IMG/VR virus record: IMGVR_UViG_3300032116_000001
Span: 124,001 to 188,000 of that record
Strand: one strand, 5' to 3'
DNA length: 64,000 bases
Below, one piece after another: positions 1,224-15,985 of this stretch; positions within the stretch are counted from its first letter, which is position 1, and each line of letters starts with the position of its first letter. A program made the position numbers and the translations under genes. The notes beneath the pieces were generated by a model. It ran no database searches, was not told where the DNA came from, and saw nothing but the letters and a program-made list of their open reading frames with translations.

Positions 1224-2213
1224 ATGGCAGATCGAATTTTCCCCACACAAATCCAAGGCGATGGCCTTGATTCGGAAAAAGTTTTCACTGGTATCAACTG
1301 GGACGATTTTGGTTCACGTCTTGCGCAAGTTCGCGAAGCCGAAGGTACCGAAATGTCTCCTGAAGTGAGAGAATATCTTGATTCACTCAAAAACGATGAA
1401 TCTGATTTTGCTTACGAAGATGATGTAACAGCTGAAAACGAAAGCTCCAATGTCACGACCGCAAAGCGTGAACTTCCCGAAGCACTGGTAGAGCACCAAT
1501 TTAAGTCCAAGGACGAAGACGAAAATGACGAGCAAGAAGAGTCTAAAATTGTAAGAGGCAAAGAGGCTTCTGCTCAAAACAGAAGAGTAGTCTTCTCTAG
1601 CGCCAAGCAGCTGACTGCCGAGGCTATTGAAGAGGCTAAGGCCAAGGGTGATCAGGGGCTGGTTAATGCAATTTTGGCTGCCAGAAATGATCGAAGAACC
1701 GCTCTTGCGGCCAAGATCGCGGAAGCCGCCAAAGAGCAGGTAGACAAGAATGTTCGCATTGCTGAGCGAAATGCTTATCGTATGTCGATTGTGAATTCTG
1801 TTGAAGAAACCTCTAAAAAAATTACAGAAGCTGCGGCAAGTAACAACACCAAGGTTGCCTCTGACAATGATGGTTTTGTGAAAATTTCTGACCTCAAGGG
1901 GCAAGAAAGACAGGCATTTATTAAGAAGTGCGCCAGCCAGGGCTTCCCCGAGGAATATGTTTCTGCAATGCTTGGTGAAACACTGCAGGCAAATGCTGAT
2001 TTTTCTGCCGAGGCCGACAACATTAGACAAGTTATGTCAGCTGATCTTGACAAAAATATCAAGAAATCTGCCGTAGAGGGAATGGTCAAGGTTTCCTCAC
2101 TTGACAAGGCTGAATATGATCGACTCAAGAGATATTGGAAAGAAGAGCTTGGCTATGGTGATGAAGAATGGATTGATGATCTTTTCTCATCAAAATATGA
2201 TAGCAAAAAGTAA
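1224..2213 (+). CDS. Hypothetical acidic/helical protein, probably head-associated
   Basis: 329-aa ORF tightly packed upstream of the portal; E/A/K-rich coiled-coil composition. Confidence 0.75.
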   Translation: MADRIFPTQIQGDGLDSEKVFTGINWDDFGSRLAQVREAEGTEMSPEVREYLDSLKNDESDFAYEDDVTAENESSNVTTAKRELPEALVEHQFKSKDEDENDEQEESKIVRGKEASAQNRRVVFSSAKQLTAEAIEEAKAKGDQGLVNAILAARNDRRTALAAKIAEAAKEQVDKNVRIAERNAYRMSIVNSVEETSKKITEAAASNNTKVASDNDGFVKISDLKGQERQAFIKKCASQGFPEEYVSAMLGETLQANADFSAEADNIRQVMSADLDKNIKKSAVEGMVKVSSLDKAEYDRLKRYWKEELGYGDEEWIDDLFSSKYDSKK

Positions 2214-2226
2214 CCGCCAATAAATA

Positions 2227-2264
2227 TTTTCTTCCCTCTTTATTATAAGAAAGAGGGAAGAAAA
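2227..2264. terminator. 15-bp perfect inverted repeat (terminator-like hairpin)
   Basis: ttttcttccctcttt / attataag / aaagagggaagaaaa just after the 2213 stop. Confidence 0.5.
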
Positions 2265-2277
2265 GGTAAAAAACAAC

Positions 2278-2496
2278 ATGAGTGAAATTCGACGATTAAG
2301 TGAAGACAGCGCTGAACATTATATTTCTTTCTTAGAAAATAATGGTTTGGGTAACATAGGCAATAAAGCAAAAATGATTTTGCCAACTGATACAAAACAG
2401 TCGAACGTGGCAGGAGATGGCGTAGGCCTTCCTGTAATTCATAGCAATTTTATTTCGCTTACTAATCTTGTTAAGAAAACAGATGAAAGTGAGTAA
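2278..2496 (+). CDS. Small hypothetical protein
   Basis: 72-aa ORF filling the gap, aagg upstream. Confidence 0.55.
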   Translation: MSEIRRLSEDSAEHYISFLENNGLGNIGNKAKMILPTDTKQSNVAGDGVGLPVIHSNFISLTNLVKKTDESE

Positions 2497-2521
2497 ATAT
2501 CAATCATTAAGGTAAAAAAAC

Positions 2522-3382
2522 ATGAGCAAATTTCTTCGTAAAGTTTCTGATACAGAAAAGCTGCCTTCATCTGTGCAGCAGGCGTTTATTGGTGCGTCCT
2601 CAAATCAGGACGACCCATATGCACATTTGCGCATGGCCTCAAGAGACAATCAACTTAGTATAGCTAAGCAGTCTATGGGATATGATGAAGATGATGCTGA
2701 CATCGATGACCGATCCTGGGAGAGAGTTCAGGGCGCAAGCATTTACGAAGATAGACGCGCATCTAATATGACAGAAAGAATGAATAATCTTTCAATAGAA
2801 GATTTTTCTCCGCACGCCGTAAGGCGCTCGGATTATGGTATAGATGCAGGCGAGTCTTACAGAGAGACAACAAGCTCTCTTCAGGCATATACCCCTGAAG
2901 ATTATATGGCAGCTATGCTTAGGGGGGCTAGCATTTGGGACCCTGATATGGAAGTTATTGCTGATGCATTCCATAACAGTCAAGAAACTCAATCAGAACA
3001 GGTTATAGCCGAAGCTAAAATTCGCAGGGAAGCAAGACAAAACAGGCATCAGCAATGGGAAGAAGAAACCTCAAGTCATTTAGATTCTATTCGCCCATCA
3101 CGTGTTCTGTCGGCTCGCGCCGCACCTATATTACGAACAGCTGCTGAGAACGAAGCTGCAGGAAACTTTGGAATGATTGATTTTGATTCATTAGACAATC
3201 ATGAAGCACAACGGCTTGCCATGCAGGAAGAAAAACGTAATAGTCGGCTTGCCTTAAAACGCAATGGGATCAAGGATCGCGACGAAAGACATAATGACTG
3301 GCAAGAGCATGTTCAGACTCATGCAAGCACTATTCAAGATATTTATAATTATCAAAAGTACAACTTAAGCAGTGAGGATTAA
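2522..3382 (+). CDS. Hypothetical protein, probably head-associated
   Basis: 286-aa ORF co-oriented with the head module; no family recognised. Confidence 0.75.
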   Translation: MSKFLRKVSDTEKLPSSVQQAFIGASSNQDDPYAHLRMASRDNQLSIAKQSMGYDEDDADIDDRSWERVQGASIYEDRRASNMTERMNNLSIEDFSPHAVRRSDYGIDAGESYRETTSSLQAYTPEDYMAAMLRGASIWDPDMEVIADAFHNSQETQSEQVIAEAKIRREARQNRHQQWEEETSSHLDSIRPSRVLSARAAPILRTAAENEAAGNFGMIDFDSLDNHEAQRLAMQEEKRNSRLALKRNGIKDRDERHNDWQEHVQTHASTIQDIYNYQKYNLSSED

Positions 3383-3387
3383 TTTTT

Positions 3388-4374
3388 ATGAAAGGGCTTC
3401 GAACCGCGCAAGAGTTTGGTGGTGGGTTGGCCTCTAATCCCGCAAACGGAATAGCTAATATCCCACTCAATTCAACAGAGGATTCATCTGGTGTTAAGCC
3501 AGATGAATTACTTTCTATTTTGTCAAAGTTTATAAATTCTGATAGCGCAAGTGCTGTTCAATTTAAAGCAAAATTTGAAGATATTTTGCTTCGGTTAACT
3601 AGGCCAGATATGATAGATGCAATCCAAAAAATCATAAAAGCTATTGATATGGCTCAAGACCCTAAAAAAAGAACAAAAGACCCAAATACAGGCAAGTTTG
3701 ACCCAACAGCACAGGAACTTGCGCAAAAACTTTCCGACAAGGTGAAAATGATGGAAAAATCAAGCAGTAATCAAAATTCAAATGTTCTCAAATTTAATTT
3801 ACGAGAAGCCCAAGCCAAAAAGCCAAAGAAAAAAACAAGAGGCAACCCATTTAGGGTTTTAATGGGTAAAGTTGGCAAATTGCTTGACCATGGACTTGAA
3901 AAAAGTGAAATCAGAAGATATCTTGTTAAGCTGGGTATGTGGAATGAAGAAACAATTGAAAGAGCTATTGACATTGTTAGAGATTACAATAAAAAGAAAA
4001 GACGCGACGATGCCGATGGAAACAAAAAGGAATCTCAAATGTCTTCTGAATTAATGAGATTAGCAGAATCTAAGTTGGCATCAATGACTGATGAAGAATT
4101 TGATAATTTTTTAAATTCCAGAATTGCAGCCAAGGTTTTAGATAATTCAATCTATGATATTCCTGCTGATTTTTCAAAAAGATCAACAACGGAGTTAATG
4201 GCAAGGGCAACGTGGTTAATGTCGCTAATGAATTATAGTAAAGACATGCCACAAGGAGACGGCAAAAAACCTGCTGACACCAAGGGGGCGTCGGCAGAGC
4301 TGAAGTCAATTAAAAAGGCTCTGGAAGATCGTGGTTTTAATGCAGATGACTTGTCTGAAATGGGAATTAAGTAA
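3388..4374 (+). CDS. Hypothetical protein, probably head-associated
   Basis: 328-aa ORF, gagga SD upstream; basic segment KKPKKKTRGNPFRVLMGKVGKLLDHG. Confidence 0.75.
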   Translation: MKGLRTAQEFGGGLASNPANGIANIPLNSTEDSSGVKPDELLSILSKFINSDSASAVQFKAKFEDILLRLTRPDMIDAIQKIIKAIDMAQDPKKRTKDPNTGKFDPTAQELAQKLSDKVKMMEKSSSNQNSNVLKFNLREAQAKKPKKKTRGNPFRVLMGKVGKLLDHGLEKSEIRRYLVKLGMWNEETIERAIDIVRDYNKKKRRDDADGNKKESQMSSELMRLAESKLASMTDEEFDNFLNSRIAAKVLDNSIYDIPADFSKRSTTELMARATWLMSLMNYSKDMPQGDGKKPADTKGASAELKSIKKALEDRGFNADDLSEMGIK

Positions 4375-4397
4375 TTCGATTAAAGCGAATTGATTGG

Positions 4398-5957
4398 GTG
4401 AAAAAAATGTGTGAACATGTAAAAGAAGAAGAAACAAAATTTGAAGGCAAGCATGATCTTCAGATGGGTGGTGGGGGCTTGATTGAAATGATATTAAGCA
4501 CCATGGAGCAAATTAGCGAAGCTGTTAAATCAGCAGTTAAGGAAAATTCACACAATAAAGAATCTCCCATGGACTTAATCGAAGATTCAGACCTTGATGA
4601 TTCTGATCCCGTTGTTCAAGAGTTCTTTAATGACGGCGGGTGTAAAGGTGTATTAAAAATTATAAGATTAAACAAGCCCGAAGTTGCTCTTGAAAAGCTG
4701 TCTGAAATTTCAGTCAAGTTGCAAAAAGTTCGAATGGCAAATCGCCGTTTAATTTTAAGACAAATTTTTGCAGCAGCACAAATTGCGCGGGGAATTGATA
4801 ACGAAGCTGTAAATCTGGAGAGAGTCGCTCACAAAATGACTTCTCATAGCAAGGGATTTTATCAAGCAGAGTCTATTATGGCTATTGACAGCCTTGTTGC
4901 TGATACTTACAATCAGAGCGAGAAGCGCGTATTGGCTTCGGCCAGGGATTTAATTCTTTCTGGTGAATTCGAGAAAGGCGCACTGAAGCTAAAAGAAATT
5001 TATGCCTCAGCATTACCGCAATCACAAAATATCAGAACGGCTTACACAACGCTAAGAACCCAAGGTGGAGAGCCCTATTTGTTATGTCCAAAAGGCATTC
5101 ACGTAATGGGACATGCGGTGCCTATGGAAGTGAGCAAATGTAGAGAAAATTGCATTGATAGCAAGGTTGATGAAAGCGGGGCAGTATCATGCCAATATCA
5201 ATCTTGGCTCAAGCATGCTGATACTCACGAAAAAGCCATGGCAAGACTTGAAGTACATCGTCACCCAGATAATGCAGAAAACGCATTGGCGTATGATGAA
5301 GGTTCAAGAGGGCTACCATATAAGCTTAGTGATCTGCCTGTAGAGAAAAGATTTGAAGACAGCAATCAGGGATCAAATAAAGTGCGTGACAAAAAAGTAA
5401 GCGACGAAAGTATTGAGGCCAGACTGGAAAAAGCAAAATCTGGGCAGCCAGGACAGCGCCCAGGGCATTCTTCATCTATTTCAGATATGAACATAAAGGC
5501 ATCAAGTTTTAATAATAAAAGACATGCAATTGCTCAGAATGTGGGCATTAAATCAATGGAACAACAGCTGCGATCAGAATCCTCTGCAGAGCCTGCAAAT
5601 ATTACAATTGAAAAGCAGCTAGAAACAACAAATGGGTATAATGGCCACAGGGGCGAAATGGAACAAAGTTATGCCCACCAACTGGCCAATCAAGAATCCA
5701 ATTCAGAATCAATAACTGAACAGCTTTTGGACCAAGAAGAAATTGGTGGGGTGCGGGTCACAGAAAGACTTGCGTCAGATGTCGCAGAAATCAATCCAGA
5801 GTCTAAAGATACTTTAGGTAGCCAAATTTCTGAAGATCACACAAATGAACAATTGGATGATTTCACAATTGAAGAACTTCTTGCTGATGAAAGACGTGGG
5901 TTGTCGGAAGACGAAATCGATATGCTTTTAGAGCAATTGCTTGAAGAAACAAGATAG
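4398..5957 (+). CDS. Hypothetical head-module protein with Cys-rich domain and C-terminal T-x-E-x-x-L repeats
   Basis: 519-aa ORF; LCPKG..CRENC..SCQY cluster; repeats such as TIEKQLETT and TIEELLADERRG. Confidence 0.75.
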   Translation: MKKMCEHVKEEETKFEGKHDLQMGGGGLIEMILSTMEQISEAVKSAVKENSHNKESPMDLIEDSDLDDSDPVVQEFFNDGGCKGVLKIIRLNKPEVALEKLSEISVKLQKVRMANRRLILRQIFAAAQIARGIDNEAVNLERVAHKMTSHSKGFYQAESIMAIDSLVADTYNQSEKRVLASARDLILSGEFEKGALKLKEIYASALPQSQNIRTAYTTLRTQGGEPYLLCPKGIHVMGHAVPMEVSKCRENCIDSKVDESGAVSCQYQSWLKHADTHEKAMARLEVHRHPDNAENALAYDEGSRGLPYKLSDLPVEKRFEDSNQGSNKVRDKKVSDESIEARLEKAKSGQPGQRPGHSSSISDMNIKASSFNNKRHAIAQNVGIKSMEQQLRSESSAEPANITIEKQLETTNGYNGHRGEMEQSYAHQLANQESNSESITEQLLDQEEIGGVRVTERLASDVAEINPESKDTLGSQISEDHTNEQLDDFTIEELLADERRGLSEDEIDMLLEQLLEETR

Positions 5958-5976
5958 TGCAAAAGGTGTGTGCAAG

Positions 5977-6417
5977 GTGTGGTATCGACTTTCGCAAAAA
6001 ACTTTAGGTATTGGCGGCGGGGCATTAAAGTCCTCGCCGTCAAATGATTCTGTATTGCCAGCAGAACAACATGCCAAAATGTGGGATGTATTGGTTAATC
6101 AAACAGATCATATCGGAAACAGAAAGGGCGAGCCAAATGAAACCACTGGTGATCAAGGTGCCATAAACGAGGGGCAAGCAACTCAAGGCACAGAAATGAG
6201 AAGAGTTTCGCCTTATCATAGCAATCCTGAACACACAACTCTTGAAGAGCAACTTGAAACCGCAAGGCAACAAAACGTAAATAACGATCCGATAGCAATG
6301 ACGCAAAACAATTTCGGAACTGGAGAAATGCTAATAAGAGGAGTGCCCCAGTATAGTTCTGGCAAAGGGTGGGTAGGCTTTCAAGGAAATAACCCGTCTG
6401 CGATAACCCTGGTTTAA
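5977..6417 (+). CDS. Hypothetical protein beginning MWYRLSQ (start re-assigned from 5941 to GTG 5977)
   Basis: GTG at 5977 follows aaaggtg, removes the overlap with the upstream gene and gives the shared N-terminal tag. Confidence 0.7.
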   Translation: MWYRLSQKTLGIGGGALKSSPSNDSVLPAEQHAKMWDVLVNQTDHIGNRKGEPNETTGDQGAINEGQATQGTEMRRVSPYHSNPEHTTLEEQLETARQQNVNNDPIAMTQNNFGTGEMLIRGVPQYSSGKGWVGFQGNNPSAITLV

Positions 6418-6438
6418 AGGTTTTTTTCTTTTATGCAG

Positions 6439-6472
6439 ACAATATCTTAAGGAAAGAGTCTTAAGATATTGT
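6439..6472. promoter_or_regulatory. 13-bp perfect inverted repeat directly followed by TATAAT, upstream of the portal
   Basis: acaatatcttaag / gaaagagt / cttaagatattgt, overlapping the start of tataat; could be a terminator or an operator. Confidence 0.4.
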
Positions 6473-6538
6473 ATAATTGTGCAATATGTCTTTAAAGACA
6501 TAAGTGAGGTTTTGCTTTTGGCCAATCAAGAATCAATA

Positions 6539-8941
6539 ATGGAAGCCCCAACATTAGCCAGTGTTATGAGGGTTGCCGCGCAAACTGTGTCTGGCGAGAG
6601 AGTGATCGGTGCAACAACAAAAAGAGACACAGGCCAGCAACATGTTGCGTCAAGAATTACGTCTGGGATCGGAGCCAGCGTACACAAAGGCGTGCGGGAA
6701 GCGCAGGTTTCACCCAACAGCATTACTACGGCACCCAACTTTTATAGCCCGTTTTTAACACCAAGGGCTTATCAAGTTCCAAACGCACGCAAAGAAGTGT
6801 ATCTTTGGGCAAACTGGTGGCGAAATAATGAACCAAAAGTTGCCGCGGCTATAAATTTTTACAAACTTTTTCCTTTTTCTGGATGGAAACTTGAATGTTC
6901 AAGTTCATATGTCAAAGACTATTTTGAGAAATTAATCCAAAAGCTTAATTTCCAAAAATGGCTTCCAGAAATCAGTGGCGTATATCATCTTTTTGGAGAC
7001 TGCTTTGTACTTGCAACTCTTGAGTGCGAACACTGTGAGGGAAGCATGATTGATAAAAACACGGGAGAAGCCTGCAGCCATGATGGGGCAACATGGGCCA
7101 GCCTGACTATTTTAAACCCCGACAGTATTCAGATTAGGCCTGGTATATCTGGTCAGGAAAATTCATATTTTTATCAACCAACCGAAAGAGACATTCGATT
7201 AATCAATGAACGTCAATCACAACAATTCTATCATCAAATACCAGATAATGTAAAGAGACTTATCAAAAAGGGAGAGCCATTCCTTCTTAATTCCATATGC
7301 ATAGAGCACTTTAAATTTGGCTCTAGCCCTTGGGAAGATTACGGAACGCCAATGATTAGGTCGCTCTTTCCGACACTGGCTTATAAAGATAAATTAAGAA
7401 ATGCTCAATGGCTTATTGCTGAACGACATATTCTTCCCGTTAAAGTTGTAAAAGTTGGATCAGACAACAGGCCAGCAAGCCAATCTGATATTGATAGCGT
7501 GCAAGAAGAATTGGCCGCTGTTGCAAATGACCCCAATTTGACTTTAGTCACTCATAATGCATTCGATTTTGATTATGTGGGAGCATCAGGAAAAGTTCTG
7601 CAGCTTACAAATGAATTTGAGCTTATAGATCAAGAGATTCTTGATGGCGTAATGCTAAATAAGGCACTATTAAATGGTGAAGGCCCAACATATGGAAATG
7701 CCCAGGTTGGCCTCTTGGCAATGAAACAGCGCTTAGAAACATTCCGAAATGAAGTTGCAAGATGGATTGAAGAAAAATTATTTAAACCAGTCGCAGAATG
7801 GAACGGCTTTGTCATTGAGGGCGAAAGAGGACAAGATGAATTAGTTTATCCCAAAATTGTTTTTAGTGATTTAGAGCTTAAGGACAAAACTGGGATTTTG
7901 CAAATGTTTGTCACTGCTAATAGCAATGGTGTTATTTCAAATCAGTCATTAATTGAAGAATTTGGCCTTAATCCAGACCAAGAAATTGAAAGACTCCGTG
8001 AGGAGCAGGGCGCTAACTTTGTGCAAAACCCAGCAATAGGAAACACAGACCTTGGTAATGGTTTTGCAGGCGGCATGGGTGGAGGATTCGGCGGGATGGC
8101 CCCATCAATGCCTGCGCCAGGCGGAATGCCAGCGGCTCCTGGTATTGATGGTATGGGTGGAATGCCGCCTATTGGAGCAAGAGATTACCGAGAAAATTAT
8201 CGCCTGGCATCTGGTATAATGAACGACATTTATCGTGAAAAAATTGGCATTCATACTGCAGAAATTCAGACGAGAACAGCATCAAAAACAATTAAGTCTC
8301 AGGCTCATTACGAATTTTTAAGCACAATAAAACCTGTTTCTGGTCGGGGATTGGCTGGGGAACTTCCAGAGGAATATGATGGCTTTGGCAATGTCCTAGA
8401 GCCACAGTTGTTAGGAGGACCATTCTGTTTTCCTCTTAATTCATCGGCAATTCATGAGCTAAGAAACATAATCGCAGAAGCCTCTAATGATCCTGCAGGC
8501 AAAATTGCTTTAGCCTCGGCTGAAGAAGCAAAAAATAGAATAACCATTGGCAAGAAGGGTGGCAGAAATGAAGAGAAACAAGTTAATTTGTTCACAAGCA
8601 TTGAGAAGAAACTTTACTATCTTTTGACATCTTTAAACTTACCTTTTGCGATTTATGCTCAATATAGTATGGGGCAAACAAGTGATTACACCCTGGATGC
8701 CGCAATACCATCGTTGAGGCTAGGCTTTGAGGCAGATGGTGAAATTTGGCACAATAGTCCAGATAAAATTGCAAGAGATAAAAGAAGAGATATGGAGCTA
8801 GCAGCAAATGGCTGGACAATTCTTCGCTTTACAGACAAAGAGTTAAATGATCGCCAAAACGAAGTTGCCCAGGTAATTTTACAAGCTATCCGAAAAGTTG
8901 CAGCACCAGGTCAAGATAATCAAGGGAATATCATTCTCTAG
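6539..8941 (+). CDS. Portal protein with C-terminal DUF559/Vsr-like endonuclease domain (ORF open from GTG 6479; ATG 6539 preferred)
   Basis: Portal-like core (EPKVAAAINFYKLFPFSGWKL, GTPMIRSLFPTLAYKDKLR, ILPVKVVKVG), position before the protease, C-terminal YTLDAAIP..FEADGEIWH..RD..L..NGWTILRF. Confidence 0.85.
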   Translation: MEAPTLASVMRVAAQTVSGERVIGATTKRDTGQQHVASRITSGIGASVHKGVREAQVSPNSITTAPNFYSPFLTPRAYQVPNARKEVYLWANWWRNNEPKVAAAINFYKLFPFSGWKLECSSSYVKDYFEKLIQKLNFQKWLPEISGVYHLFGDCFVLATLECEHCEGSMIDKNTGEACSHDGATWASLTILNPDSIQIRPGISGQENSYFYQPTERDIRLINERQSQQFYHQIPDNVKRLIKKGEPFLLNSICIEHFKFGSSPWEDYGTPMIRSLFPTLAYKDKLRNAQWLIAERHILPVKVVKVGSDNRPASQSDIDSVQEELAAVANDPNLTLVTHNAFDFDYVGASGKVLQLTNEFELIDQEILDGVMLNKALLNGEGPTYGNAQVGLLAMKQRLETFRNEVARWIEEKLFKPVAEWNGFVIEGERGQDELVYPKIVFSDLELKDKTGILQMFVTANSNGVISNQSLIEEFGLNPDQEIERLREEQGANFVQNPAIGNTDLGNGFAGGMGGGFGGMAPSMPAPGGMPAAPGIDGMGGMPPIGARDYRENYRLASGIMNDIYREKIGIHTAEIQTRTASKTIKSQAHYEFLSTIKPVSGRGLAGELPEEYDGFGNVLEPQLLGGPFCFPLNSSAIHELRNIIAEASNDPAGKIALASAEEAKNRITIGKKGGRNEEKQVNLFTSIEKKLYYLLTSLNLPFAIYAQYSMGQTSDYTLDAAIPSLRLGFEADGEIWHNSPDKIARDKRRDMELAANGWTILRFTDKELNDRQNEVAQVILQAIRKVAAPGQDNQGNIIL

Positions 8942-8990
8942 TGTTGAGTAATTTTTAGCATATTTTCTGTTATTTTTTTGAAAATGTTAC

Positions 8991-9015
8991 AGGTGCAAGC
9001 CTGAAAATAACAGAA
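8991..9015 (+). promoter_or_regulatory. AGG-N19-GAA late-promoter-like motif, first of a tandem pair before the protease
   Basis: AGG tgcaagcctgaaaataaca GAA. Confidence 0.65.
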
Positions 9016-9040
9016 AGGCATATAAAGCGTTGGTTTTGAA
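9016..9040 (+). promoter_or_regulatory. AGG-N19-GAA motif, second of the tandem pair
   Basis: AGG catataaagcgttggtttt GAA, directly abutting the first copy. Confidence 0.65.
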
Positions 9041-9086
9041 AGTTTTCAAAAAATCAACATAACTAATTTTAGGAGAAAGAATCACC

Positions 9087-12000
9087 TTGATGGAGCGGCG
9101 AGCCAAGTGCGGCATCATAAATATTCATAGCTTTCTCAACGAGGAAGATCGCAATGCGGCTCGTGATCACATGATGCGAACTGCTTCTGTTCAATTAAGA
9201 GAAGCAGCTAAAATTGGTTTGCAGTCTTTATATGCTGATCCAGAAGAAGTTTTAAAGAAATACAAAGACTTTGACATAGTTAAAGCAATGCAGGCAAGAA
9301 AAGGTGCCAAGCTTCTGTGGGTCAGGGCCAGGGCGATTGACGCTGATACAGTAAATGCCAATGGCGATTATTTCTCAAGGGCCGAGTTACTTAAGGAAGT
9401 TGAAGTTAAGGGCGAAAAGATACCTGCGTATAAAACATTTGAAGGTGTCCCGATTTATACAAATCACAAAAACGATGACATCGAGCAGGCAAAGGGTATG
9501 GTCGTTTATGCAGAATGGGACGAGGAACAAAATTGTGTATTCTGTACATTCTTCGTTGACGAAGAAGCGTACCCTGATATAGCAAGAAATATTCGAACTG
9601 GTGTAATCCATGATGTTTCTATGGGCTGTCAGGTGCAAAGTGGCGAGTGCTCTAAATGCGGCAATATAGCCACTATTGAAAAAGAATATTGTGATTGTCT
9701 CAAGAAATACAAAGGCAAAAAACACCCTGTAACAGGTGAAAAAATTTATGAAAAAAACTTTGGATTAAAGTTTATTGAATTAAGTTGTGTTGGTGACGGG
9801 GCATTTGAAACCTGCGAAATAGAAGAGCTTTATGACGTTGATGAAATTCTTGATGCTGCTATGAGCACAGAAAGACGTGCAAATTCTATTTATTCAAGCA
9901 TAGTTCTTGCCAGCACATTAATGCCAGACAACACTGTTGATAAGCATTATTTTGAGGAATCTTTAAGAGAAATTTCTGCCGCTGCTCAATCTGCAGTACG
10001 ATTAGCCCAATCTGCAGGCACCCTGGTTGGTGGGCAGTTGATGGCAGGCGAGGGCGCGGACCAAAATGCAACAGTTTCGGCAGTATTAAACGCTCTGGGA
10101 ATTGATCCAAGGTCAGGGTTAAATATTCTTGATTTACTTAATCTTGCCTTAAACTTTTTAGAAGTTGCGGTTATGAATCTTTTTGCAAGAAAAGATAATG
10201 TTGACTTGACTCATGTTGGAAAAATTACAAAAAGCATGGCCGATCTTCAAAACACCATGCAAGACATGATTGATGATGGCGTAGATACTGGTGTAAGAAA
10301 TCAACAGCCAATTAATCAAGGTCAAATTGCAAATCAGCCACCAATGGCAGCTCCACAAATGCCCCAGGGTGGTCAACAAATTAATCCTGGCGCTGGGCAG
10401 CAACCCATGAATTGGAATAACTTGGGAGATGTTGGAAGATCAATAAGCCCAATGTCTATGCCTGGGGGAATTGGTGGTGGCGTTGTGCTTTCATCTTCTG
10501 ATCCACAAATGATAATGTGGGCGTCAAAGGATGGAAGTCGCGAAGTTTACGCCAGCGTAAAAGCTTCGCAAAACAATCAATCTAGTAGATTGACAAACAA
10601 TATAGTAGAATTTGGACAAGCTCTTGTTGGCTTTAAAAATTCGCTTGGCATAGACCAAAAATCAATTGCCAATTTTAACAAAAACAATCAATTCGTGCGT
10701 GCTGCCCAAGGGCGCAACACAAATCAAAAGACCAACGCGCCTGTTACTGCAGGGGCGGGAGAATACCAAACTATGGATCATTTCGCAAAAATCGCTCAAG
10801 AGCAGCGCAAGAAATACGCTTTTACCGCCCATGTAGATGTTACTATGGAGGATGCCAGCGGCAACCGCGTTGTTCTTTCAACTGACGGAAATATTTCTGG
10901 ATTTGTCAAGGGTGTTAAAGCCCAGTGGGAGCCAGAACTTACTGAATCTCAAATCGCTCGCATGGAAAATGGCGAGGGCACAAGAGTTGCATCTGAGTTG
11001 CTTGCAAGTTTTGCAAAGCAAGTTAAAACAGCTGGATGGAAGCCTTATACCGAAACAGATGTCAAGGAAAACGAACTTGAGCCACATCGCAACGGGACAA
11101 AGATTGAAACAAGAGAAGAATCTTTGGAAAAAATGAGGTCCAACAACAAGGGTGAAAAAACCATGCAAGAAGCACTTGGTGGTGATTATTACTCCAATAG
11201 AAGAGACGCCGACGACGATGTTAAAGAAAACATGCTTGATGAAAGCGCAGGACTTTACGGCAGGGCCGTAAATGAGTCATTTAATGAAGTAAAGGATCGC
11301 TTGCTTGAAGATGCACGGCGTGGACATCCCGAAAATACACTTGAAGAACAACTTTCTGAGTGCAGAGAAAATCATGGAACCGCAGAAGTTGAAGTGGTAA
11401 TGACAATGGTGAAAGAAGCAATGGCCAAGGCCGTTGTTGCTTCAAGAGTTTTGCCAGAAGAAATTGTTTCCGTGGCTGAAACGCTGGCTTCGCGCAATGA
11501 TCTGGAAGAACTCGTTGCTCTTGCAAGCTTGGGTATGAATACCAGAAAGGCTTATGCTAATCGAAGAGCATTCCATAAAATTTCTGCTGTATTAATGGCA
11601 CCTGATGCTGCTCTGTTGCATTCGCTTGGTGAGATTGTGAGCCGTGAAATAACTGCATCTGATGTAAGTGAGGCAATTCGAGTTGCTGCATCTATGAAAG
11701 ACGTGGCAACTACTGCTGTCGCAAACATGGTTGAAGCCATGAGAGACGGCGAAATGGTTGAGGCAGCGCCTGTAAACATTAAGGTTAGCAGAGAAGAAAG
11801 ACTCAAAACAGCTCTTGCCTCTTCTGGGCACGAATCATTTAATAAAGAGCACTTAAAGGCTGTTATTTCAGCAATGGTGATGGCAAGTGAAGAAACACAA
11901 GCTACACCCGAAGAGGTTGTTGATTCACTCAAGGGACTTAATTTGGCCTCAAAAATCAACGAAGCCCGAACAGCTTCGGCGACGGATGGAAGATTGACTG

Positions 12001-13367
12001 CAAGAGCAAGAAAACAATTCTGGGGTAATGAAAGATTCGCATCTAAGTCAACGGTCTCTGATGCAACTGTTGGATGGATTGCTGATTACGCAACCAACTT
12101 TGATTACAGTACGCAGGCGGTGGCTCAGGCTGTGGAAAAACTTACCAATGATCCCAGGGTGGCAACGCACTTGATTACTAAGGCCATTGATGCCAAGCTC
12201 CAAGGCGAAAGAATGGCAGGTGTTACGGTTACAGAAGAAAAGTCAGAAATCATTCGCTTTGTGTGCAGGGCAGAAGACCTCGGAGGTATTGACCCCAAGG
12301 ACGAAGCTTTTGAAGACACTTTTAGACAAAAGGCTATTGAAATTCTAACCGCTCAAGGATTTACAGTTGATCCAGGAACATTTAGCTTTACTGATCTTTC
12401 AGTAACAGAAAACGGGGACATTACTGCGTCGGTTCAAACCAGAGTCACAAAGACTTTTAAAGCAGACGCCGAATTACCTGCTCAGCCCCTGGAAAATATG
12501 GACACAATGTCCGTGGCCCCAGAAGTTATTGAGCCAACAGTAGTAATGTCTGAAGCAGCAAGAGAAGCCAGACTTGCAAGGCGGCAGCAAATTTTAAGCA
12601 AGATTGCACAAGCCGCCCCTGGCATGATGCCACCAGCTCAAGAGATGGGCACGCCAGGCATGGATGCTTCGGGTATGGGAATGGCAGGCGCTGAAGGTCT
12701 TGGCGTTGCCGCCTTGTCGGTGCCGACGGCAGCGGGTGACAATCCTGTTGAAGAACCCGCTGATACTGATGCAATGCCAGAACCTGGCAATCCAAAGCCA
12801 ATTGGTACTATCTGCCCCATATGTGGCAGCGATGATGTTGATCTTGCTAACAGCGAGGGTGAGTGCAACTCGTGTGGCACGCGCTATAAAGTTATGCAAA
12901 GTATTGAAATCATTAGCATTGGTGGTGGTGAGCCCGTTAATAATGATTCGCCTGAGGCAGAAATGGATGGCATGGCGTCACCCGATACCATGGGTCTTGG
13001 AGAGGACACTGGTCTGGGCGCTGCCACTGCGCCCGCTCCTATGGGTTCACCCGACATGAACAACCCAGGAGGCATGCCGCCTGCTCAAGGAATGGGAGCC
13101 ATGGCCAGCGCAGGCGCAGCTTTGTATCGAATTGCTGCCACAGTTGACTCTGATGTGTATCTCAAAACAACTATGCCAAACTTTAGCCGAACTGCTGAAA
13201 AGCAATTGCCCATCGGCATGGTATGTCCAAAGTGCGGCAGCAGAGAGGCTCAAAAAGTCAAGAACTCTACGTTCTGTTATGATTGTGGAAACTATGCTAT
13301 TAGCAGCGTGAAGCCAAATGATTCTGATCCCACAAAGATCGATGTTTCAATAACCTGGTTGGCATAA
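9087..13367 (+). CDS. Prohead (capsid maturation) serine protease with long scaffold-like C-terminal region and zinc ribbons
   Basis: NANGDYF, PIYTNH (His), DVSMGC (Ser), FIELSCV motifs of HK97/assemblin-fold prohead proteases; CSKC, CPIC..CNSC, CPKC..CYDC; located between portal and capsid. Confidence 0.85.
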   Translation: MMERRAKCGIINIHSFLNEEDRNAARDHMMRTASVQLREAAKIGLQSLYADPEEVLKKYKDFDIVKAMQARKGAKLLWVRARAIDADTVNANGDYFSRAELLKEVEVKGEKIPAYKTFEGVPIYTNHKNDDIEQAKGMVVYAEWDEEQNCVFCTFFVDEEAYPDIARNIRTGVIHDVSMGCQVQSGECSKCGNIATIEKEYCDCLKKYKGKKHPVTGEKIYEKNFGLKFIELSCVGDGAFETCEIEELYDVDEILDAAMSTERRANSIYSSIVLASTLMPDNTVDKHYFEESLREISAAAQSAVRLAQSAGTLVGGQLMAGEGADQNATVSAVLNALGIDPRSGLNILDLLNLALNFLEVAVMNLFARKDNVDLTHVGKITKSMADLQNTMQDMIDDGVDTGVRNQQPINQGQIANQPPMAAPQMPQGGQQINPGAGQQPMNWNNLGDVGRSISPMSMPGGIGGGVVLSSSDPQMIMWASKDGSREVYASVKASQNNQSSRLTNNIVEFGQALVGFKNSLGIDQKSIANFNKNNQFVRAAQGRNTNQKTNAPVTAGAGEYQTMDHFAKIAQEQRKKYAFTAHVDVTMEDASGNRVVLSTDGNISGFVKGVKAQWEPELTESQIARMENGEGTRVASELLASFAKQVKTAGWKPYTETDVKENELEPHRNGTKIETREESLEKMRSNNKGEKTMQEALGGDYYSNRRDADDDVKENMLDESAGLYGRAVNESFNEVKDRLLEDARRGHPENTLEEQLSECRENHGTAEVEVVMTMVKEAMAKAVVASRVLPEEIVSVAETLASRNDLEELVALASLGMNTRKAYANRRAFHKISAVLMAPDAALLHSLGEIVSREITASDVSEAIRVAASMKDVATTAVANMVEAMRDGEMVEAAPVNIKVSREERLKTALASSGHESFNKEHLKAVISAMVMASEETQATPEEVVDSLKGLNLASKINEARTASATDGRLTARARKQFWGNERFASKSTVSDATVGWIADYATNFDYSTQAVAQAVEKLTNDPRVATHLITKAIDAKLQGERMAGVTVTEEKSEIIRFVCRAEDLGGIDPKDEAFEDTFRQKAIEILTAQGFTVDPGTFSFTDLSVTENGDITASVQTRVTKTFKADAELPAQPLENMDTMSVAPEVIEPTVVMSEAAREARLARRQQILSKIAQAAPGMMPPAQEMGTPGMDASGMGMAGAEGLGVAALSVPTAAGDNPVEEPADTDAMPEPGNPKPIGTICPICGSDDVDLANSEGECNSCGTRYKVMQSIEIISIGGGEPVNNDSPEAEMDGMASPDTMGLGEDTGLGAATAPAPMGSPDMNNPGGMPPAQGMGAMASAGAALYRIAATVDSDVYLKTTMPNFSRTAEKQLPIGMVCPKCGSREAQKVKNSTFCYDCGNYAISSVKPNDSDPTKIDVSITWLA

Positions 13368-13382
13368 TTAAGCAAGAGTAGG

Positions 13383-13433
13383 AAACAAAACGAGACATGA
13401 TTGGTTAAATTCTAATCATGTCTCGTTTTGTTT
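13383..13433 (+). terminator. Rho-independent terminator-like hairpin
   Basis: 20-bp perfect stem aaacaaaacgagacatgatt / aatcatgtctcgttttgttt ending in a T-run. Confidence 0.7.
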
Positions 13434-13488
13434 TTTCATTTATTATTCCTTTTTATTGAATAATAAATGAAAAAAAATATTTTTTTGC

Positions 13489-13513
13489 AGGTGTTAAAGC
13501 TATTTTTAGTGAA
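13489..13513 (+). promoter_or_regulatory. AGG-N19-GAA motif before the scaffold-decoration-capsid genes
   Basis: AGG tgttaaagctatttttagt GAA. Confidence 0.65.
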
Positions 13514-13568
13514 GTCTTTAAGCAGACACTCACTTGTTAATGCAAAACATAATCAAGTGAGGAGCCTA

Positions 13569-15305
13569 ATGGCTCTTAAACAGAGGGAAGCAGCAATTAT
13601 GAATAAGAATAACGAAACTCCCCTCCAGACTGATAGACTGAAACAAGTTCTTAGAATCGCAGAAATCAAAGCTACGGATAAAGAAGATATGGAAAATTGT
13701 GTAAACGACATGCAAAGAAGTGCTTCGCTTGATGAAAGTGAAGCACGCATTGTCGCCAAGGCCGTTAGGGCAAAGCATCTTCCTAATATTCTCCGTGAAG
13801 CGGGTGCTGAAGAAATGATTAAAGAGGATTTGTTAACGCCAGTTGGAGTGGCCTCGGAAACTGCTGACTTCGCTAAAGATAAAAATGACGACGATCACGA
13901 TGAAGATAATTCAGAATTTGTTGAAAACGAAGATTTTGATTTATTGAATTCTGAAGAAGATTTAAACGACGATATGGGCGAAGCAAACGACGAAACAAAC
14001 ATCGCCACTTTTGAAATCGACGTTCCCGCAGACAAGGTTGAGGAAGCGCAGAAAGCTGTGCAAGAAGCTCTTGACAAGATTTTTAGCGGAGACGCATCTG
14101 ACGATGAGTTAGATGAAGAAGACCATGACACAGCACTTGAAGGCCTTGCCGACGAAGACGTTGAGGAAGTGGATGATCTTGAAGGTGACATGGACATTGA
14201 TATGTCCACTGACGTAGAGGAGGCCGATGATGCCCCCTTGCAGCACACAGCAAGCACGGTGAATAAAATTATGACCCCAGAAGAAAGAACCAAGCGCCAA
14301 GCAGAGCGCGAAGCTATTCTCCAGCGCGTGGTCGTTGCTGAGGAAGCATCCAAGCCAAAAGACAGAGGTCTTGGCAAGGATACAACTGAAGGCACTTATG
14401 GTGGACAAAAGGCAAAGCCTTTCCAGCATAATGATGCCGCGCAATACCACGGCGAAGAAGCCTTCCCAACAATGTCCCTTAAGGGCGGTGAAGGTAATTC
14501 CCAGCGCGGAGACAATCCTAACTATGCCGATCAACCAATCCCGACTATGAATCCCGAAAACCTTCAGTTGAAGGGTGCCGTGGATGCGGTGAAGCTGGAC
14601 GGTCAGCCTGACGGAACTATCGAATATGTAATTGATTTCAATCATCTTGATGATGTTCCATCTGCGGAGCCTGAACGTGGCACCGCGTTTGAAATTCCAA
14701 CGCAAATGGAAAATCTTCCTCGCAAGACAACCGTTGCTTCTCAAAATGACACTGAGGAAAGACTGGCTGAAGTTGAAGATGTTGTTTACAATTACCTCGT
14801 TGAGGCTGGTGTAGACGGCGAAGAAGTTGGTAAAATGACAGTTGCCGAAGGTGTGAATCTTCTTATGAAGATTGCATCTGAAAAGAGTAAGGACACCGAG
14901 GCAAACGACCTTAACGTTGAAATCAATGCAGAAGATGCAAAAGATGAGCGCAAGGCCGCGATTCAAGAATCACGGATCAAAACTGCTTACTCTTGCGCAT
15001 TTAAGCTTGCTTTGAACAATGTCCTCGCACAAAATGAAGTTGATGGATACGCTGAAACTATGCTGAACGACAGGTTACCTGTTGACAGCATGATCAGACA
15101 AACAACGCTTCTGATGCGCTCTGCTAACAGTAGCGCTCAACGTGTCGCTCAGGCAGCCGCTGAGAACTTTGGCACTGCTCGCTCGGCTTCAAGCCAAGCC
15201 GTTTCGTCATCCCCTGCACTTTCTGGTGATTTTAACACCAATAGTGCTTCGACAGATATACAAGAGGCTCTTAGAGGTGTGTTTACCATGCCCCGTGAGA
15301 ACTAA
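13569..15305 (+). CDS. Putative capsid scaffolding/assembly protein (start 13569 or 13599; ORF open from 13467)
   Basis: Very acidic, helical protein immediately before decoration and capsid genes; gaggag SD before ATG 13569; the 13467 start lies upstream of the promoter motif. Confidence 0.65.
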   Translation: MALKQREAAIMNKNNETPLQTDRLKQVLRIAEIKATDKEDMENCVNDMQRSASLDESEARIVAKAVRAKHLPNILREAGAEEMIKEDLLTPVGVASETADFAKDKNDDDHDEDNSEFVENEDFDLLNSEEDLNDDMGEANDETNIATFEIDVPADKVEEAQKAVQEALDKIFSGDASDDELDEEDHDTALEGLADEDVEEVDDLEGDMDIDMSTDVEEADDAPLQHTASTVNKIMTPEERTKRQAEREAILQRVVVAEEASKPKDRGLGKDTTEGTYGGQKAKPFQHNDAAQYHGEEAFPTMSLKGGEGNSQRGDNPNYADQPIPTMNPENLQLKGAVDAVKLDGQPDGTIEYVIDFNHLDDVPSAEPERGTAFEIPTQMENLPRKTTVASQNDTEERLAEVEDVVYNYLVEAGVDGEEVGKMTVAEGVNLLMKIASEKSKDTEANDLNVEINAEDAKDERKAAIQESRIKTAYSCAFKLALNNVLAQNEVDGYAETMLNDRLPVDSMIRQTTLLMRSANSSAQRVAQAAAENFGTARSASSQAVSSSPALSGDFNTNSASTDIQEALRGVFTMPREN

Positions 15306-15961: not shown

Positions 15962-15985
15962 GATAATAAGGAGATCAACAAATAA

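What the first reader, a model, noticed from the sequence alone, without database searches (positions are those of the whole stretch)
1224..15305. Dense [K/R]-x-A-[S/Q/A] motifs in head-module proteins suggest an Ala-specific, assemblin-like maturation protease
Seen: KVAS, RMAS, RTAA, RTAQ, REAQ, RLAS, RTAS (portal and protease), RLAQ, KIAQ (twice), RVAS, RFAS, KIAS and RVAQ recur through the pre-portal proteins, portal, protease and scaffold. They are not evident in the major capsid protein. The protease also contains VYASVKASQ. Established: herpesvirus assemblins share a fold with phage prohead proteases and cut Ala-Ser bonds (HCMV release site YVKA/S), whereas T4 gp21 and phiKZ gp175 cut after Glu. 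Inference: these are processing sites for a protease with herpes-like P1 specificity.
Basis: partly seen in the sequence, partly recalled or inferred. Interest (0 to 1): 0.6.

Follow-up and report, generated by a model that had tools for sequence, protein, structure and literature searches.

The report
Candidate Arg-x-Ala protease sites, phage head
In this 379-kb relative of Bacillus phage G, the proteins that build and fill the head carry about four times more [Arg/Lys]-x-Ala-[Ser/Gln/Ala] motifs than chance predicts. Most likely these are cutting sites for the phage's own head-maturation protease, a specificity not described for phages in the papers I could search, but no cleavage has been shown.

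Summary
In the eight head-module proteins (1224-15305), [KR]-x-A-[SQA] occurs 41 times against 11.3 expected (z about 9). The rest of the window shows 22 against 20.5, and the major capsid and decoration proteins have none.

- **Unbiased check:** a scan of all residue pairs puts R-x-A first (z 8.0) and A-S second.
- **Controls:** reversed, shifted and Glu-based motifs are not enriched. Codons at the sites are diverse.
- **Replication:** all 48 related metagenomic loci repeat the enrichment (2.5-6x), and so do phage G and Tunturi_5.
- **Conservation:** many sites are conserved with K/R swaps inside poorly conserved flanks.
- **Placement:** sites bracket the protease domain in three distant relatives, and they lie in the flexible N-terminus and C-terminal linker of the portal.

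The protease domain (residues 67-250 of a 1426-aa fusion, His127/Ser178) has the T4 gp21/assemblin fold. The same scan on T4 recovers its known I/L-x-E motif.

The best reading is a set of prohead-protease sites with P3 = Arg/Lys (some Val), P1 = Ala and P1' = Ser/Gln/Ala. The scissile bond is inferred, not shown. The resemblance to herpesvirus proteases is limited to P1/P1' and the protease-extension architecture. This is a new variant of a known kind, testable in cultivable phage G.

The parts
9087..13367 (+). 1426-aa protease fusion protein. It has an N-terminal propeptide, a prohead-protease domain, and an extension of about 1150 aa that carries many motif sites and two C-terminal zinc ribbons. 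The true start is probably the ATG at 9090.
   Evidence: phrog_18299 head maturation protease E 1e-16 and phrog_2774. [KR].A[SQA] 13 observed against 3.8 expected. Orthologs found in 29 loci.
9285..9836 (+). Protease catalytic domain (residues 67-250). The candidate catalytic residues are His127 (9465-9467) and Ser178 (9618-9620). A Cys-rich zinc-ribbon insertion follows Ser178.
   Evidence: The AF2 model matches T4 gp21 5jbl at Z 9.5, 129 aa, 24% identity, and VZV/HSV-2/HCMV proteases at Z 6.5-8.4. H127 is invariant and S178 nearly invariant. Both are aligned in phage G gp19, Tunturi_5 gp331 and E3 gp77. Inteins are inserted right after DVSMG in L049 and L003.
9177..9209 (+). N-terminal candidate autoprocessing sites RTA|S (residues 31-34) and REA|A (38-41), upstream of the protease domain.
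   Evidence: Kept in 21/24 and 24/24 orthologs. [KR]-[TI]-A sites align in phage G gp19 and Tunturi_5 gp331.
9873..10010 (+). Candidate release sites just after the protease domain: RRA|N (263-266) and RLA|Q (305-308).
   Evidence: The motif column is present in 24/25 and 25/25 sequences. The first site aligns with EKVA|S of phage G gp19 and THVA|S of Tunturi_5 gp331.
10698..12611 (+). Conserved candidate sites in the extension: RAA|Q 538, KIA|Q 568, RVA|S 633, RTA|S 961, RFA|S 983, RMA|G 1042, KIA|Q 1172.
   Evidence: Each motif column is occupied in 18-25 of 25 sequences, with K/R swaps at P3, invariant or near-invariant Ala, and flank identity of only 0.27-0.54.
6479..8941 (+). Portal protein (820 aa). 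The Mu-like portal core spans about residues 74-514, followed by a flexible linker and a C-terminal DUF559/Vsr-like nuclease-fold domain (residues ~700-806, nt 8576-8896).
   Evidence: phrog_16240 E 1.6e-32, PF06074, PF04480. Motif 8 observed against 1.3 expected. AF2 model.
6569..6706 (+). Portal N-terminal candidate sites RVA|A (31-34) and REA|Q (73-76), in a low-confidence N-terminal region.
   Evidence: Site 31 is kept in 23/33 orthologs with flank identity 0.37. A motif column near residue 72 is occupied in 21/34 sequences. pLDDT is below 50 for residues 1-124.
8201..8284 (+). Portal C-terminal candidate sites RLA|S (575-578) and RTA|S (599-602). They lie between the portal core and the nuclease-like domain, so cutting here would detach about 220 C-terminal residues.
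   Evidence: Kept in 32/33 and 22/33 orthologs (31/34 if Gly is allowed at P1'), with flank identity 0.29-0.35. They lie in the low-pLDDT stretch 484-654.
13467..15305 (+). 612-aa protein in the scaffold position, between the protease and the decoration/MCP genes. Conserved sites: RSA|S 84, REA|G 110, RSA|N 551, RVA|Q 559, RSA|S 572.
   Evidence: 6 observed against 1.5 expected. Motif columns are occupied in 18-21 of 22 sequences. No family hit. The Atlas model has pLDDT 0.42. It is syntenic with phage G gp21 and Tunturi_5 gp332, and the latter has 7 against 1.9.
1224..5957 (+). Four pre-portal proteins of unknown function (1224-2213, 2522-3382, 3388-4374, 4398-5957), candidate internal or core head proteins carrying motif sites.
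   Evidence: Window counts are 4/1.4, 4/1.0, 5/1.0 and 1/1.1. Orthologs in 48 loci average 2.3-5.6 times expectation. Motif columns occupied in most orthologs are often not the window's own positions, which indicates turnover.
15335..16840 (+). Decoration-position protein (15335-15961) and major capsid protein (15986-16840). Both are free of the motif.
   Evidence: The MCP is 46.5% identical to phage G gp27 and matches phrog_2522 at E 7e-66. No motifs in the window. Across the orthologs, 6 observed against 21.9 expected.

Best explanation
The motif [R>K, some V]-[L/T/V/x]-A-[S/Q/A, in relatives also N/G/T] is the recognition signal of the phage's own prohead (head-maturation) serine protease. 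That protease is the N-terminal domain (residues ~67-250, His127/Ser178) of the 1426-aa protein at 9087-13367. I propose the following sequence of events inside the assembled procapsid.

1. The protease frees itself by cutting at sites on both sides of its catalytic domain (A33/A40, then A265 and A307).
2. It dices its own ~1150-aa extension, the 612-aa scaffold-position protein and the four pre-portal proteins.
3. It trims the portal at its flexible N-terminus and in the linker after the core, which detaches a C-terminal nuclease-fold domain.

The shell proteins (MCP and decoration protein) have no sites and stay intact.

What is shown: the enrichment, its restriction to head-module proteins, selection at the protein level, conservation across a clade that reaches phage G and Tunturi_5, and the protease fold.

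What is inferred: that the sites are cut at all; that the bond cut is Ala|Ser/Gln/Ala (P3 = Arg/Lys, P1 = Ala), by analogy with the P3-x-P1 signatures of T4 gp21, phiKZ gp175 and the herpesvirus proteases; and the order of events.
For: - **Enrichment:** [KR].A[SQA] 41 against 11.3 (z 9), R.A[SQA] 31 against 5.25 (z 11). Block shuffles keep z near 9.
- **Not post hoc:** the unbiased pair scan ranks R.A first and AS second. P1 in [KR].X[SQ] is Ala only (30 against 6.2). P1' after [KR].A is S (z 7.4) or Q (z 6.2).
- **Controls not enriched:** reversed motif, spacing +/-1, D/E at P3, E/S/G/LIVM at P1, [LI].E, [SAG].E, K[SA].
- **Head-specific:** the four most enriched of 407 genome ORFs are head-module proteins.
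- **Protein-level signal:** 8 different P3 codons and all 4 Ala codons are used.
- **Replication:** all 48 related loci show 2.5-6.0x, 1322 against 369 in total, while decoration protein plus MCP show 6 against 21.9. Phage G: gp7 7/1.7, portal 4/0.9, protease 3/0.5. Tunturi_5: gp328 11/3.2, gp332 7/1.9, with K.A the top unbiased pair at z 5.2.
- **Conservation:** many sites are kept with K/R swaps in weakly conserved flanks. Motif Ala and K/R residues are more conserved than other Ala and K/R residues of the same proteins (P 0.01-0.02).
- **Placement:** sites flank the protease domain in the same alignment columns in the window, phage G and Tunturi_5. The portal sites lie in low-pLDDT termini and linker.
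- **Fold:** T4 gp21 Z 9.5, assemblins Z 6.5-8.4.
- **Positive control:** the same scan on T4 gp67/68/21/22 returns I.E and L.E, the established gp21 motif, as the top two pairs.
Against: - There is no proteomic or biochemical evidence for cleavage in this phage or in any relative I could read. The phage G virion papers that are held give no termini, and Gonzalez 2020 is not held.
- Some motif copies lie in the conserved, presumably folded portal core (K120, R307, R331) and are probably not cut, so not every copy is a site.
- Many of the window's copies in the pre-portal proteins are not positionally conserved.
- Several sites fall in predicted helices.
- The closest solved structure, T4 gp21, cuts after Glu, so the fold does not predict Ala specificity.
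- The signal is weak in Rhodococcus phage E3.
- The scissile bond cannot be read from sequence.
Confidence: 0.65

Rival explanations
1. The motif is the protease's recognition signal, but the bond cut is not after Ala. For example, the cut could fall directly after the Arg/Lys (trypsin-like, or like the Lys|Ser cut of HK97 gp4), with Ala and Ser/Gln read on the prime side.
For: Arg/Lys is the most strongly enriched position (P3 R: 22 against 3.0). From my own knowledge, HK97 gp4 cuts gp5 after a Lys. Sequence alone cannot place the scissile bond.
Against: [KR][SA] and K[SA] are not enriched (z -2.8 and -1.7). Strict specificity at P2' and P3' with a free P1' would be unusual. The characterised members of this fold class all show a P3-x-P1 signature, and the T4 control recovers exactly that geometry. 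Val also occurs at the Arg position (11 against 3.0), which fits a P3 pocket better than a basic P1 pocket.
Confidence: 0.12
2. The motif is a short linear docking or targeting motif rather than a cleavage site. For example, it could tether internal and scaffold proteins to the inner capsid surface, to the portal, or to a protease exosite.
For: The restriction to head-interior proteins and the conservation fit any head-specific linear motif equally well. No cleavage data exist.
Against: Sites bracket the catalytic domain of the protease itself in three distant relatives. They mark domain boundaries in the portal. They turn over in position while their density is maintained. Shell proteins avoid them. 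This pattern is typical of cleavage motifs, as in T4.
Confidence: 0.12
3. The motif is cut by a different protease, either a host enzyme or another phage-encoded one such as a ClpP-type protease.
For: Phage G encodes ClpP/ClpX, which were detected in particles (PMC12484599). From my own knowledge, some Firmicute phages use a host protease for head protein trimming.
Against: The motif is conserved across phages whose isolated representatives have very different hosts: Bacillota for phage G and Acidobacteriota for Tunturi_5. The one component common to all these head modules is the homologous prohead protease. ClpP-type enzymes have no such sequence specificity (my own knowledge).
Confidence: 0.05
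4. The motif is a by-product of composition or secondary structure in Ala-rich, helical, weakly folded proteins, with no specific function.
For: The head-module proteins are Ala-rich (8-12%), and many sites lie in predicted helices.
Against: Per-protein and 15-40 residue block shuffles keep z near 9. Reversed and shifted motifs are at or below expectation. The Ala-rich decoration-position protein (16.8% Ala) has none. Motif residues are more conserved than other Ala and K/R residues. K/R swaps preserve the motif.
Confidence: 0.04

Closest known systems
T4 gp21 prohead protease (MEROPS S77) and its [L/I]-x-E| sites
   Same: - It is the best structural match to the protease domain (5jbl, Z 9.5, 129 aa, 24% identity).
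- The gene lies between the portal and the MCP.
- The motif has P3-x-P1 geometry and is over-represented in core and scaffold proteins. The same scan recovers I.E and L.E in T4.
- Internal and core proteins are diced.
   Different: - P1 here would be Ala, not Glu, and P3 basic, not Leu/Ile. Glu motifs are not enriched.
- There is no Pfam S77 hit.
- The MCP here has no sites, whereas T4 gp23 and gp24 are cut.
- The protease is fused to an extension of about 1150 aa and carries a zinc-ribbon insertion.
Herpesvirus assemblin (MEROPS S21), with release (R) and maturation (M) sites (V/L/I)-x-A|S
   Same: - The fold class is shared (VZV Z 8.4, HSV-2 7.1, HCMV about 6.7).
- The putative P1 is Ala and P1' is Ser.
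- The protease is the N-terminal domain of a longer assembly protein, with a site immediately after the catalytic domain, like the R site.
- V-x-A-S also occurs and is conserved: VWAS and V[YF]AS.
   Different: - P3 is mainly Arg/Lys.
- Gln and Ala, and Asn/Gly in relatives, are accepted at P1'.
- There is no sequence match to Peptidase_S21.
- A Ser-His-His triad was not established.
- The structure is closer to T4 gp21.
- The sites are far more numerous and spread over at least seven proteins.
phiKZ gp175 / SPN3US gp245 jumbo-phage prohead proteases ([S/A/G]-x-E|)
   Same: They are jumbo-phage heads in which many internal proteins are processed at a short P3-x-P1 motif, with multiple motif copies in the propeptides (PMC10052503; PMC13282480).
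   Different: The specificity is different (Glu at P1). The head proteins are unrelated. The phage G-like clade has a small, delta-domain-less MCP of about 284 aa that appears not to be processed.
Bacillus phage G gp19, Tunturi_5 gp331 and Rhodococcus phage E3 gp77 (annotated head maturation / prohead proteases)
   Same: They are homologous catalytic domains (37% identity to gp19). They share the H...DVSMGC...ELS.V motifs and the zinc-ribbon insertion. Phage G and Tunturi_5 show the same [KR]-x-A-[S...] enrichment in neighbouring head proteins. E3 gp77 is also a long fusion (895 aa).
   Different: The phage G and Tunturi_5 proteases are stand-alone proteins of about 290-300 aa. Lys dominates at P3 in those AT-rich genomes. 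The E3 signal is weak. No cleavage sites are reported for any of them in the papers I could read.

Membership tests
Prohead (capsid maturation) serine proteases of the HK97 gp4 / T4 gp21 / assemblin fold | Characteristic beta-barrel protease fold | tested here: met
   The AF2 model (core pLDDT 80-92) matches T4 gp21 at Z 9.5 (rmsd 3.3, 129 aa). VZV, HSV-2 and HCMV proteases match at Z 6.5-8.4 over residues ~70-250. The top Foldseek hits are the same families but weak (E 0.05).
Prohead (capsid maturation) serine proteases of the HK97 gp4 / T4 gp21 / assemblin fold | Conserved catalytic His and Ser | tested here: inconclusive
   H127 is invariant and S178 nearly invariant in 24 sequences. Both are aligned in phage G, Tunturi_5 and E3 homologs, and inteins are inserted next to Ser178 in three relatives. 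I could not check that they superpose on the catalytic residues of T4 gp21, because no coordinates are returned. The third triad residue was not identified.
Prohead (capsid maturation) serine proteases of the HK97 gp4 / T4 gp21 / assemblin fold | Gene located between the portal and the major capsid protein in the head module | tested here: met
   The gene order is portal 6479-8941, protease 9087-13367, MCP 15986-16840. The order is the same in phage G, Tunturi_5 and E3.
Prohead (capsid maturation) serine proteases of the HK97 gp4 / T4 gp21 / assemblin fold | Proteolytic processing of head proteins during maturation | not testable with these tools
   This needs virion proteomics or an enzyme assay.
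Herpesvirus assemblin (Peptidase S21) | Sequence membership (Pfam Peptidase_S21 or a PDB sequence match) | tested here: not met
   There is no Pfam hit for residues 1-320 even at E 10, and no PDB sequence hit.
Herpesvirus assemblin (Peptidase S21) | Cleavage at (V/L/I)-x-A|S | tested here: inconclusive
   A-S and [KR]/V-x-A are strongly over-represented. However, P3 is mostly basic, and cleavage itself is unproven.
Herpesvirus assemblin (Peptidase S21) | Protease fused N-terminally to a scaffold-like protein, with a release site after the catalytic domain | tested here: inconclusive
   The fusion architecture is present, and conserved motif sites lie at residues 263-266 and 305-308. A scaffold function for the extension and actual release are not shown.
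T4 gp21-type (S77) / phiKZ gp175-type Glu-specific prohead proteases | Substrate motif ending in Glu ([LI]-x-E or [SAG]-x-E), enriched in head-core proteins | tested here: not met
   [LI].E 65 against 51.3 (z 2.1). [SAG].E 81 against 97.3 (z -2.0). In T4 itself, I.E and L.E are the top pairs.

The most novel reading that the evidence does not exclude
A whole clade of huge phages (phage G, Tunturi_5, this 379-kb phage and at least 48 metagenomic relatives) uses a prohead protease with Ala at P1 and Ser-like P1', the specificity otherwise known from herpesvirus assemblins, combined with a basic P3. With it the protease frees itself from a giant polyprotein and dices more than 4,000 residues of internal head proteins. 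It also releases a nuclease-fold domain from the portal inside the capsid. This would be the first phage protease to share assemblin's P1/P1' specificity. It would also give a sequence rule for predicting mature virion proteins across this clade.
Probability: 0.5. Interest if true: 0.65.

Novelty: new variant of a known kind. Interest (0 to 1): 0.55.

Why it matters
Prohead proteases are a known kind of enzyme, but experimentally defined specificities exist for only a few phages: T4 and phiKZ/SPN3US cut after Glu, and HK97 after Lys. A well-supported [R/K]-x-A|[S/Q/A] rule for the phage G clade would do four things:

1. It would let mature virion proteins and propeptides be predicted in the largest cultivated phage and in many uncultivated huge phages.
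2. It would show that P1 specificity in this fold class is evolutionarily plastic, and it would link phage and herpesvirus proteases at the level of substrate specificity as well as fold.
3. It would point to unusual biology: a 1426-aa protease polyprotein, and a portal whose nuclease-like C-terminal domain may be clipped off.
4. It is directly testable in phage G, possibly by re-searching existing virion MS data.

The unbiased pair-scan method, validated here on T4, could also be used to read protease motifs from other uncultivated phage genomes.

Tried and rejected
- **Complex prediction** of the protease domain (60-255) with the portal linker (560-625): score 0.00, no verdict, so it is no evidence either way.
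- **Foldseek against PDB** gave only weak E-values (0.05 at best), although the top hits were T4 gp21 and herpesvirus proteases. The claim of a shared fold rests on the VIA-align Z-scores.
- **Pfam and PDB sequence searches** of the protease domain, the extension, the 612-aa protein and the decoration-position protein gave nothing beyond zinc-ribbon hints.
- **The search for homologous proteins** with the protease domain returned only close relatives and fragments, with no diverse homologs.
- **The ESM Atlas** gave no lead for the 612-aa protein.
- **megablast against phages** found nothing.
- **Literature:** no paper in the library describes cleavage sites in phage G or a phage prohead protease that cuts after Ala. 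Gonzalez et al. 2020 (PMC7316594) is not held. The 2025 phage G proteomics paper has no supplements held and reports no termini. The phage G tail paper has nothing on processing.
- **BLAST** of the pre-portal proteins, the extension and the 612-aa protein against phage G head-region proteins found no homologs.
- **Considered and rejected as the cause:**
  - a DNA-level motif, because the codons are diverse;
  - local composition, because block shuffles keep the signal;
  - a kinase-type R-x-x-S motif, because Gln and Ala occupy the last position and Ala at the third position is required.
- **Not used:** the large representative protein search, because the family scans already identified the protease; and the reads tools, because RNA or DNA reads cannot show proteolysis.

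Full report
**Context.** The window is bases 124001-188000 of a 378,848-bp IMG/VR virus record. Its major capsid protein (15986-16840, 284 aa) is 46.5% identical to gp27 of Bacillus phage G. The portal is 30% identical to phage G gp14, and the protease domain is 37% identical to gp19. So this is a huge phage of the phage G lineage.

The flagged region is the head module. It contains:
- four proteins without family hits: 1224-2213, 2522-3382, 3388-4374 and 4398-5957;
- a small ORF at 5941-6417;
- the portal at 6479-8941, 820 aa, with a Mu-like core and a C-terminal DUF559 nuclease-fold domain;
- a 1426-aa protein at 9087-13367 whose residues ~54-243 match head-maturation protease families;
- a 612-aa protein at 13467-15305 without hits;
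- an Ala-rich 208-aa protein in the position of phage G's decoration protein;
- the MCP.

- *Counts.* In the eight head-module proteins (4550 aa), [KR].A[SQA] occurs 41 times against 11.3 expected from per-protein shuffles (z 9.0). R.A[SQA] occurs 31 times against 5.25 (z 11). The other 45 ORFs of the window give 22 against 20.5.
- *Local composition.* Shuffling only within 15-, 25- or 40-residue blocks leaves z at 8.7-9.4, so local composition is not the cause.
- *Negative controls.* The reversed motif (7 against 11.4), the same residues at spacing +1 or -1 (6 and 7 against 11.4), D/E at the first position, and E, S/G or LIVM at the Ala position are all at or below expectation.
- *Post hoc choice.* The motif had been chosen after looking at the data, so I scanned all 1600 residue pairs at spacings 1-4. 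R.A comes first (61 against 22.8, z 8.0) and AS second (z 4.9).
- *Position by position.* The site reads P3 R (22 against 3.0), then V (11 against 3.0) and K. P2 is L/T/V. The third position is Ala only (30 against 6.2). The next residue is S (z 7.4), Q (z 6.2) or, weakly, A.
- *Genome-wide.* Of 407 ORFs, the four most enriched are the portal, the protease fusion, the 612-aa protein and 3388-4374.
- *DNA motif excluded.* Eight different codons are used at P3 and all four Ala codons at P1.
- *Shell proteins.* The MCP and the decoration-position protein have none.

**Replication in relatives.** A scan of viral contigs with the portal found 48 related loci (portal identity 48-75%) with syntenic orthologs of all the head-module genes.
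- Every locus repeats the enrichment. Observed over expected is 2.5-6.0, median 3.5, and the total is 1322 against 369. Decoration protein plus MCP orthologs give 6 against 21.9.
- The signal extends to distant, isolated phages. In phage G, gp7 has 7 against 1.7, portal gp14 has 4 against 0.9 and protease gp19 has 3 against 0.5, with 0 in the MCP.
- In Tunturiibacter phage Tunturi_5 (MCP 30% identical), gp328 has 11 against 3.2 and gp332 has 7 against 1.9. The unbiased scan there puts K.A first (z 5.2) and K..S second.
- In Rhodococcus phage E3 the signal is weak.

**Conservation and placement.** Many sites are kept with K/R exchange at P3, a variable P2, a fixed Ala and S/Q/A (also N/G/T) at the next position, although their flanks are poorly conserved.
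- *Portal:* residues 31, 575 and 599.
- *Protease fusion:* 31, 38, 263, 305, 538, 568, 633, 983, 1042 and 1172.
- *612-aa protein:* 84, 110, 551, 559 and 572.
- *Overall:* motif Ala and K/R residues are more conserved than other Ala and K/R residues of the same proteins (P 0.01-0.02).
- *Pre-portal proteins:* the window's own copies are mostly not positionally conserved. The orthologs nevertheless keep a 2.3-5.6-fold excess at other columns. So density is maintained while positions turn over.

An alignment of the window protease with phage G gp19 and Tunturi_5 gp331 shows two shared features. One is a site column immediately after the last strand of the catalytic domain (ERRA|N, EKVA|S, THVA|S). 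The other is a [KR]-[TI]-A site in the otherwise unconserved N-terminus.

In an AF2 model of the portal, sites 31 and 73 lie in the low-confidence N-terminus. Sites 575 and 599 lie in the low-confidence stretch between the core (which ends near residue 514) and the folded C-terminal nuclease-like domain (707-808). Three further portal copies (120, 307, 331) sit in the conserved core and are probably structural, not sites.

**The enzyme.** An AF2 model of residues 1-320 has a core pLDDT of 80-92. It aligns to T4 gp21 (5jbl) at Z 9.5 (129 aa, 24% identity) and to the VZV, HSV-2 and HCMV proteases at Z 6.5-8.4. Foldseek ranks the same families first, but weakly.
- His127 is invariant and Ser178 (in DVSMGC) nearly invariant. 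Both are aligned in phage G, Tunturi_5 and E3.
- In three relatives (L003, L040, L049) a LAGLIDADG intein sits directly after DVSMG. This is typical of insertion at a functionally critical motif.
- There is no Pfam hit to Peptidase_S77, S78 or S21.

**Positive control.** The same pair scan, applied to T4 gp67, gp68, gp21 and gp22, returns I.E and L.E as the top two patterns. This is the established gp21 motif. So a prohead-protease motif does leave this kind of statistical footprint, and in P3-x-P1 form. In the window, Glu motifs ([LI].E z 2.1, [SAG].E z -2.0) and K[SA] are not enriched.

**Interpretation.** The best explanation is that [R/K(/V)]-x-A followed by S/Q/A marks processing sites of the phage's own prohead protease. 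Under this reading the protease does the following:
- it frees itself at sites on both sides of its domain;
- it dices its ~1150-aa extension, the scaffold-position protein and the pre-portal proteins;
- it trims the portal, which detaches the C-terminal nuclease-fold domain;
- it leaves the site-free shell proteins intact.

Placing the scissile bond after Ala is an inference from the P3-x-P1 rule shared by three groups. T4 and the herpesviruses are from my own knowledge; phiKZ/SPN3US is documented in PMC13282480 and PMC10052503. I put about 0.65 on this overall reading. The main rivals are a different scissile bond within the same signal, a non-proteolytic docking motif, another protease, and a structural or compositional by-product. 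The last is largely excluded by the controls.

**Comparison with known systems.**
- In fold and gene context, the enzyme is an ordinary prohead protease.
- In architecture (an N-terminal protease, a long extension and a site right after the catalytic domain) and in P1/P1', it works like herpesvirus assemblin.
- It is not a sequence member of S21, its P3 is basic, and its nearest solved structure is T4 gp21.
- In the number of substrates, it resembles the phiKZ/SPN3US system, but with a different motif and an apparently unprocessed MCP.

**Novelty.** I found no description of this motif, nor of any phage prohead protease cutting after Ala, in the searchable library. The key phage G structure paper is not held, so prior knowledge cannot be fully excluded. 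I rate the finding a new variant of a known kind. It is moderately interesting and directly testable in cultivable phage G.

**Limits.**
- No proteomic or biochemical evidence is available.
- The complex prediction gave no verdict.
- ORFs were called mechanically. The protease ORF's TTG start at 9087 is probably the ATG at 9090, judging from the orthologs.
- The orthologs are related, so their counts are not independent. The block-shuffle, reversed-motif and distant-relative controls address this only in part.

Noticed in passing
L049:12418-17760, L003:12690-18113, L040:12658-17961 (orthologs of window 9087-13367): Three relatives carry an intein of about 350-400 aa (LAGLIDADG_3 plus an intein splicing domain). 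It is inserted directly after the conserved DVSMG|C motif of the protease, next to the putative catalytic Ser178. The window copy has no intein.
   Followed up: partly
window 8576-8896 (portal residues ~700-806): The portal carries a C-terminal DUF559 / REase_MTES_1575 (Vsr-like endonuclease fold) domain. It is conserved in nearly all 48 relatives and is separated from the portal core by a Gly/Pro/Ala-rich linker that contains two conserved motif sites. Phage G's portal (648 aa) is shorter and probably lacks this domain.
   Followed up: partly
window 9627-9700 and ~12800-13290 (protease fusion residues ~181-204, ~1240-1275, ~1378-1400): A Cys-rich zinc-ribbon-like insertion follows the catalytic Ser motif. 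It is conserved in phage G gp19, Tunturi_5 gp331 and E3 gp77. Two further zinc ribbons lie at the C-terminus of the 1426-aa protein.
   Followed up: partly
window 17044-18378 and 20287-21456: Directly downstream of the MCP lie an endonuclease/HNH protein (phrog_4645, E 4e-51) and a transposase (phrog_506, E 2e-127). These are likely mobile-element insertions inside the structural module. Only 3 of the 48 related loci have a match to the first.
   Followed up: no
window 12001-16000: GC content is 0.47 here, against 0.33-0.42 elsewhere in the window. The stretch covers the end of the protease fusion, the 612-aa protein and the decoration-position gene. The 2025 phage G paper also notes a capsid decoration gene with unusually high GC.
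   Followed up: no
L052:11638-14325 (Rhodococcus phage E3 gp77): E3's annotated prohead protease is also a long fusion (895 aa) with the same H / SVSMGC / zinc-ribbon / ELSYV motifs. So protease-extension fusions recur in the wider family that also includes Mycobacterium, Gordonia and Rhodococcus myophages. The R-x-A signal there is weak.
   Followed up: partly
protein P0008 (homolog of window 9204-9911): A 74%-identical fragment of the protease is labelled in NCBI as coming from a Desulfosporosinus sp. metagenome-assembled genome. This may hint at a Bacillota host, or it may be a binning artefact.
   Followed up: no
window 9087-9092: The mechanical ORF call starts the protease gene at TTG 9087. 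Orthologs begin MY[KR]xAKGG, so the ATG at 9090 is the more likely start.
   Followed up: partly
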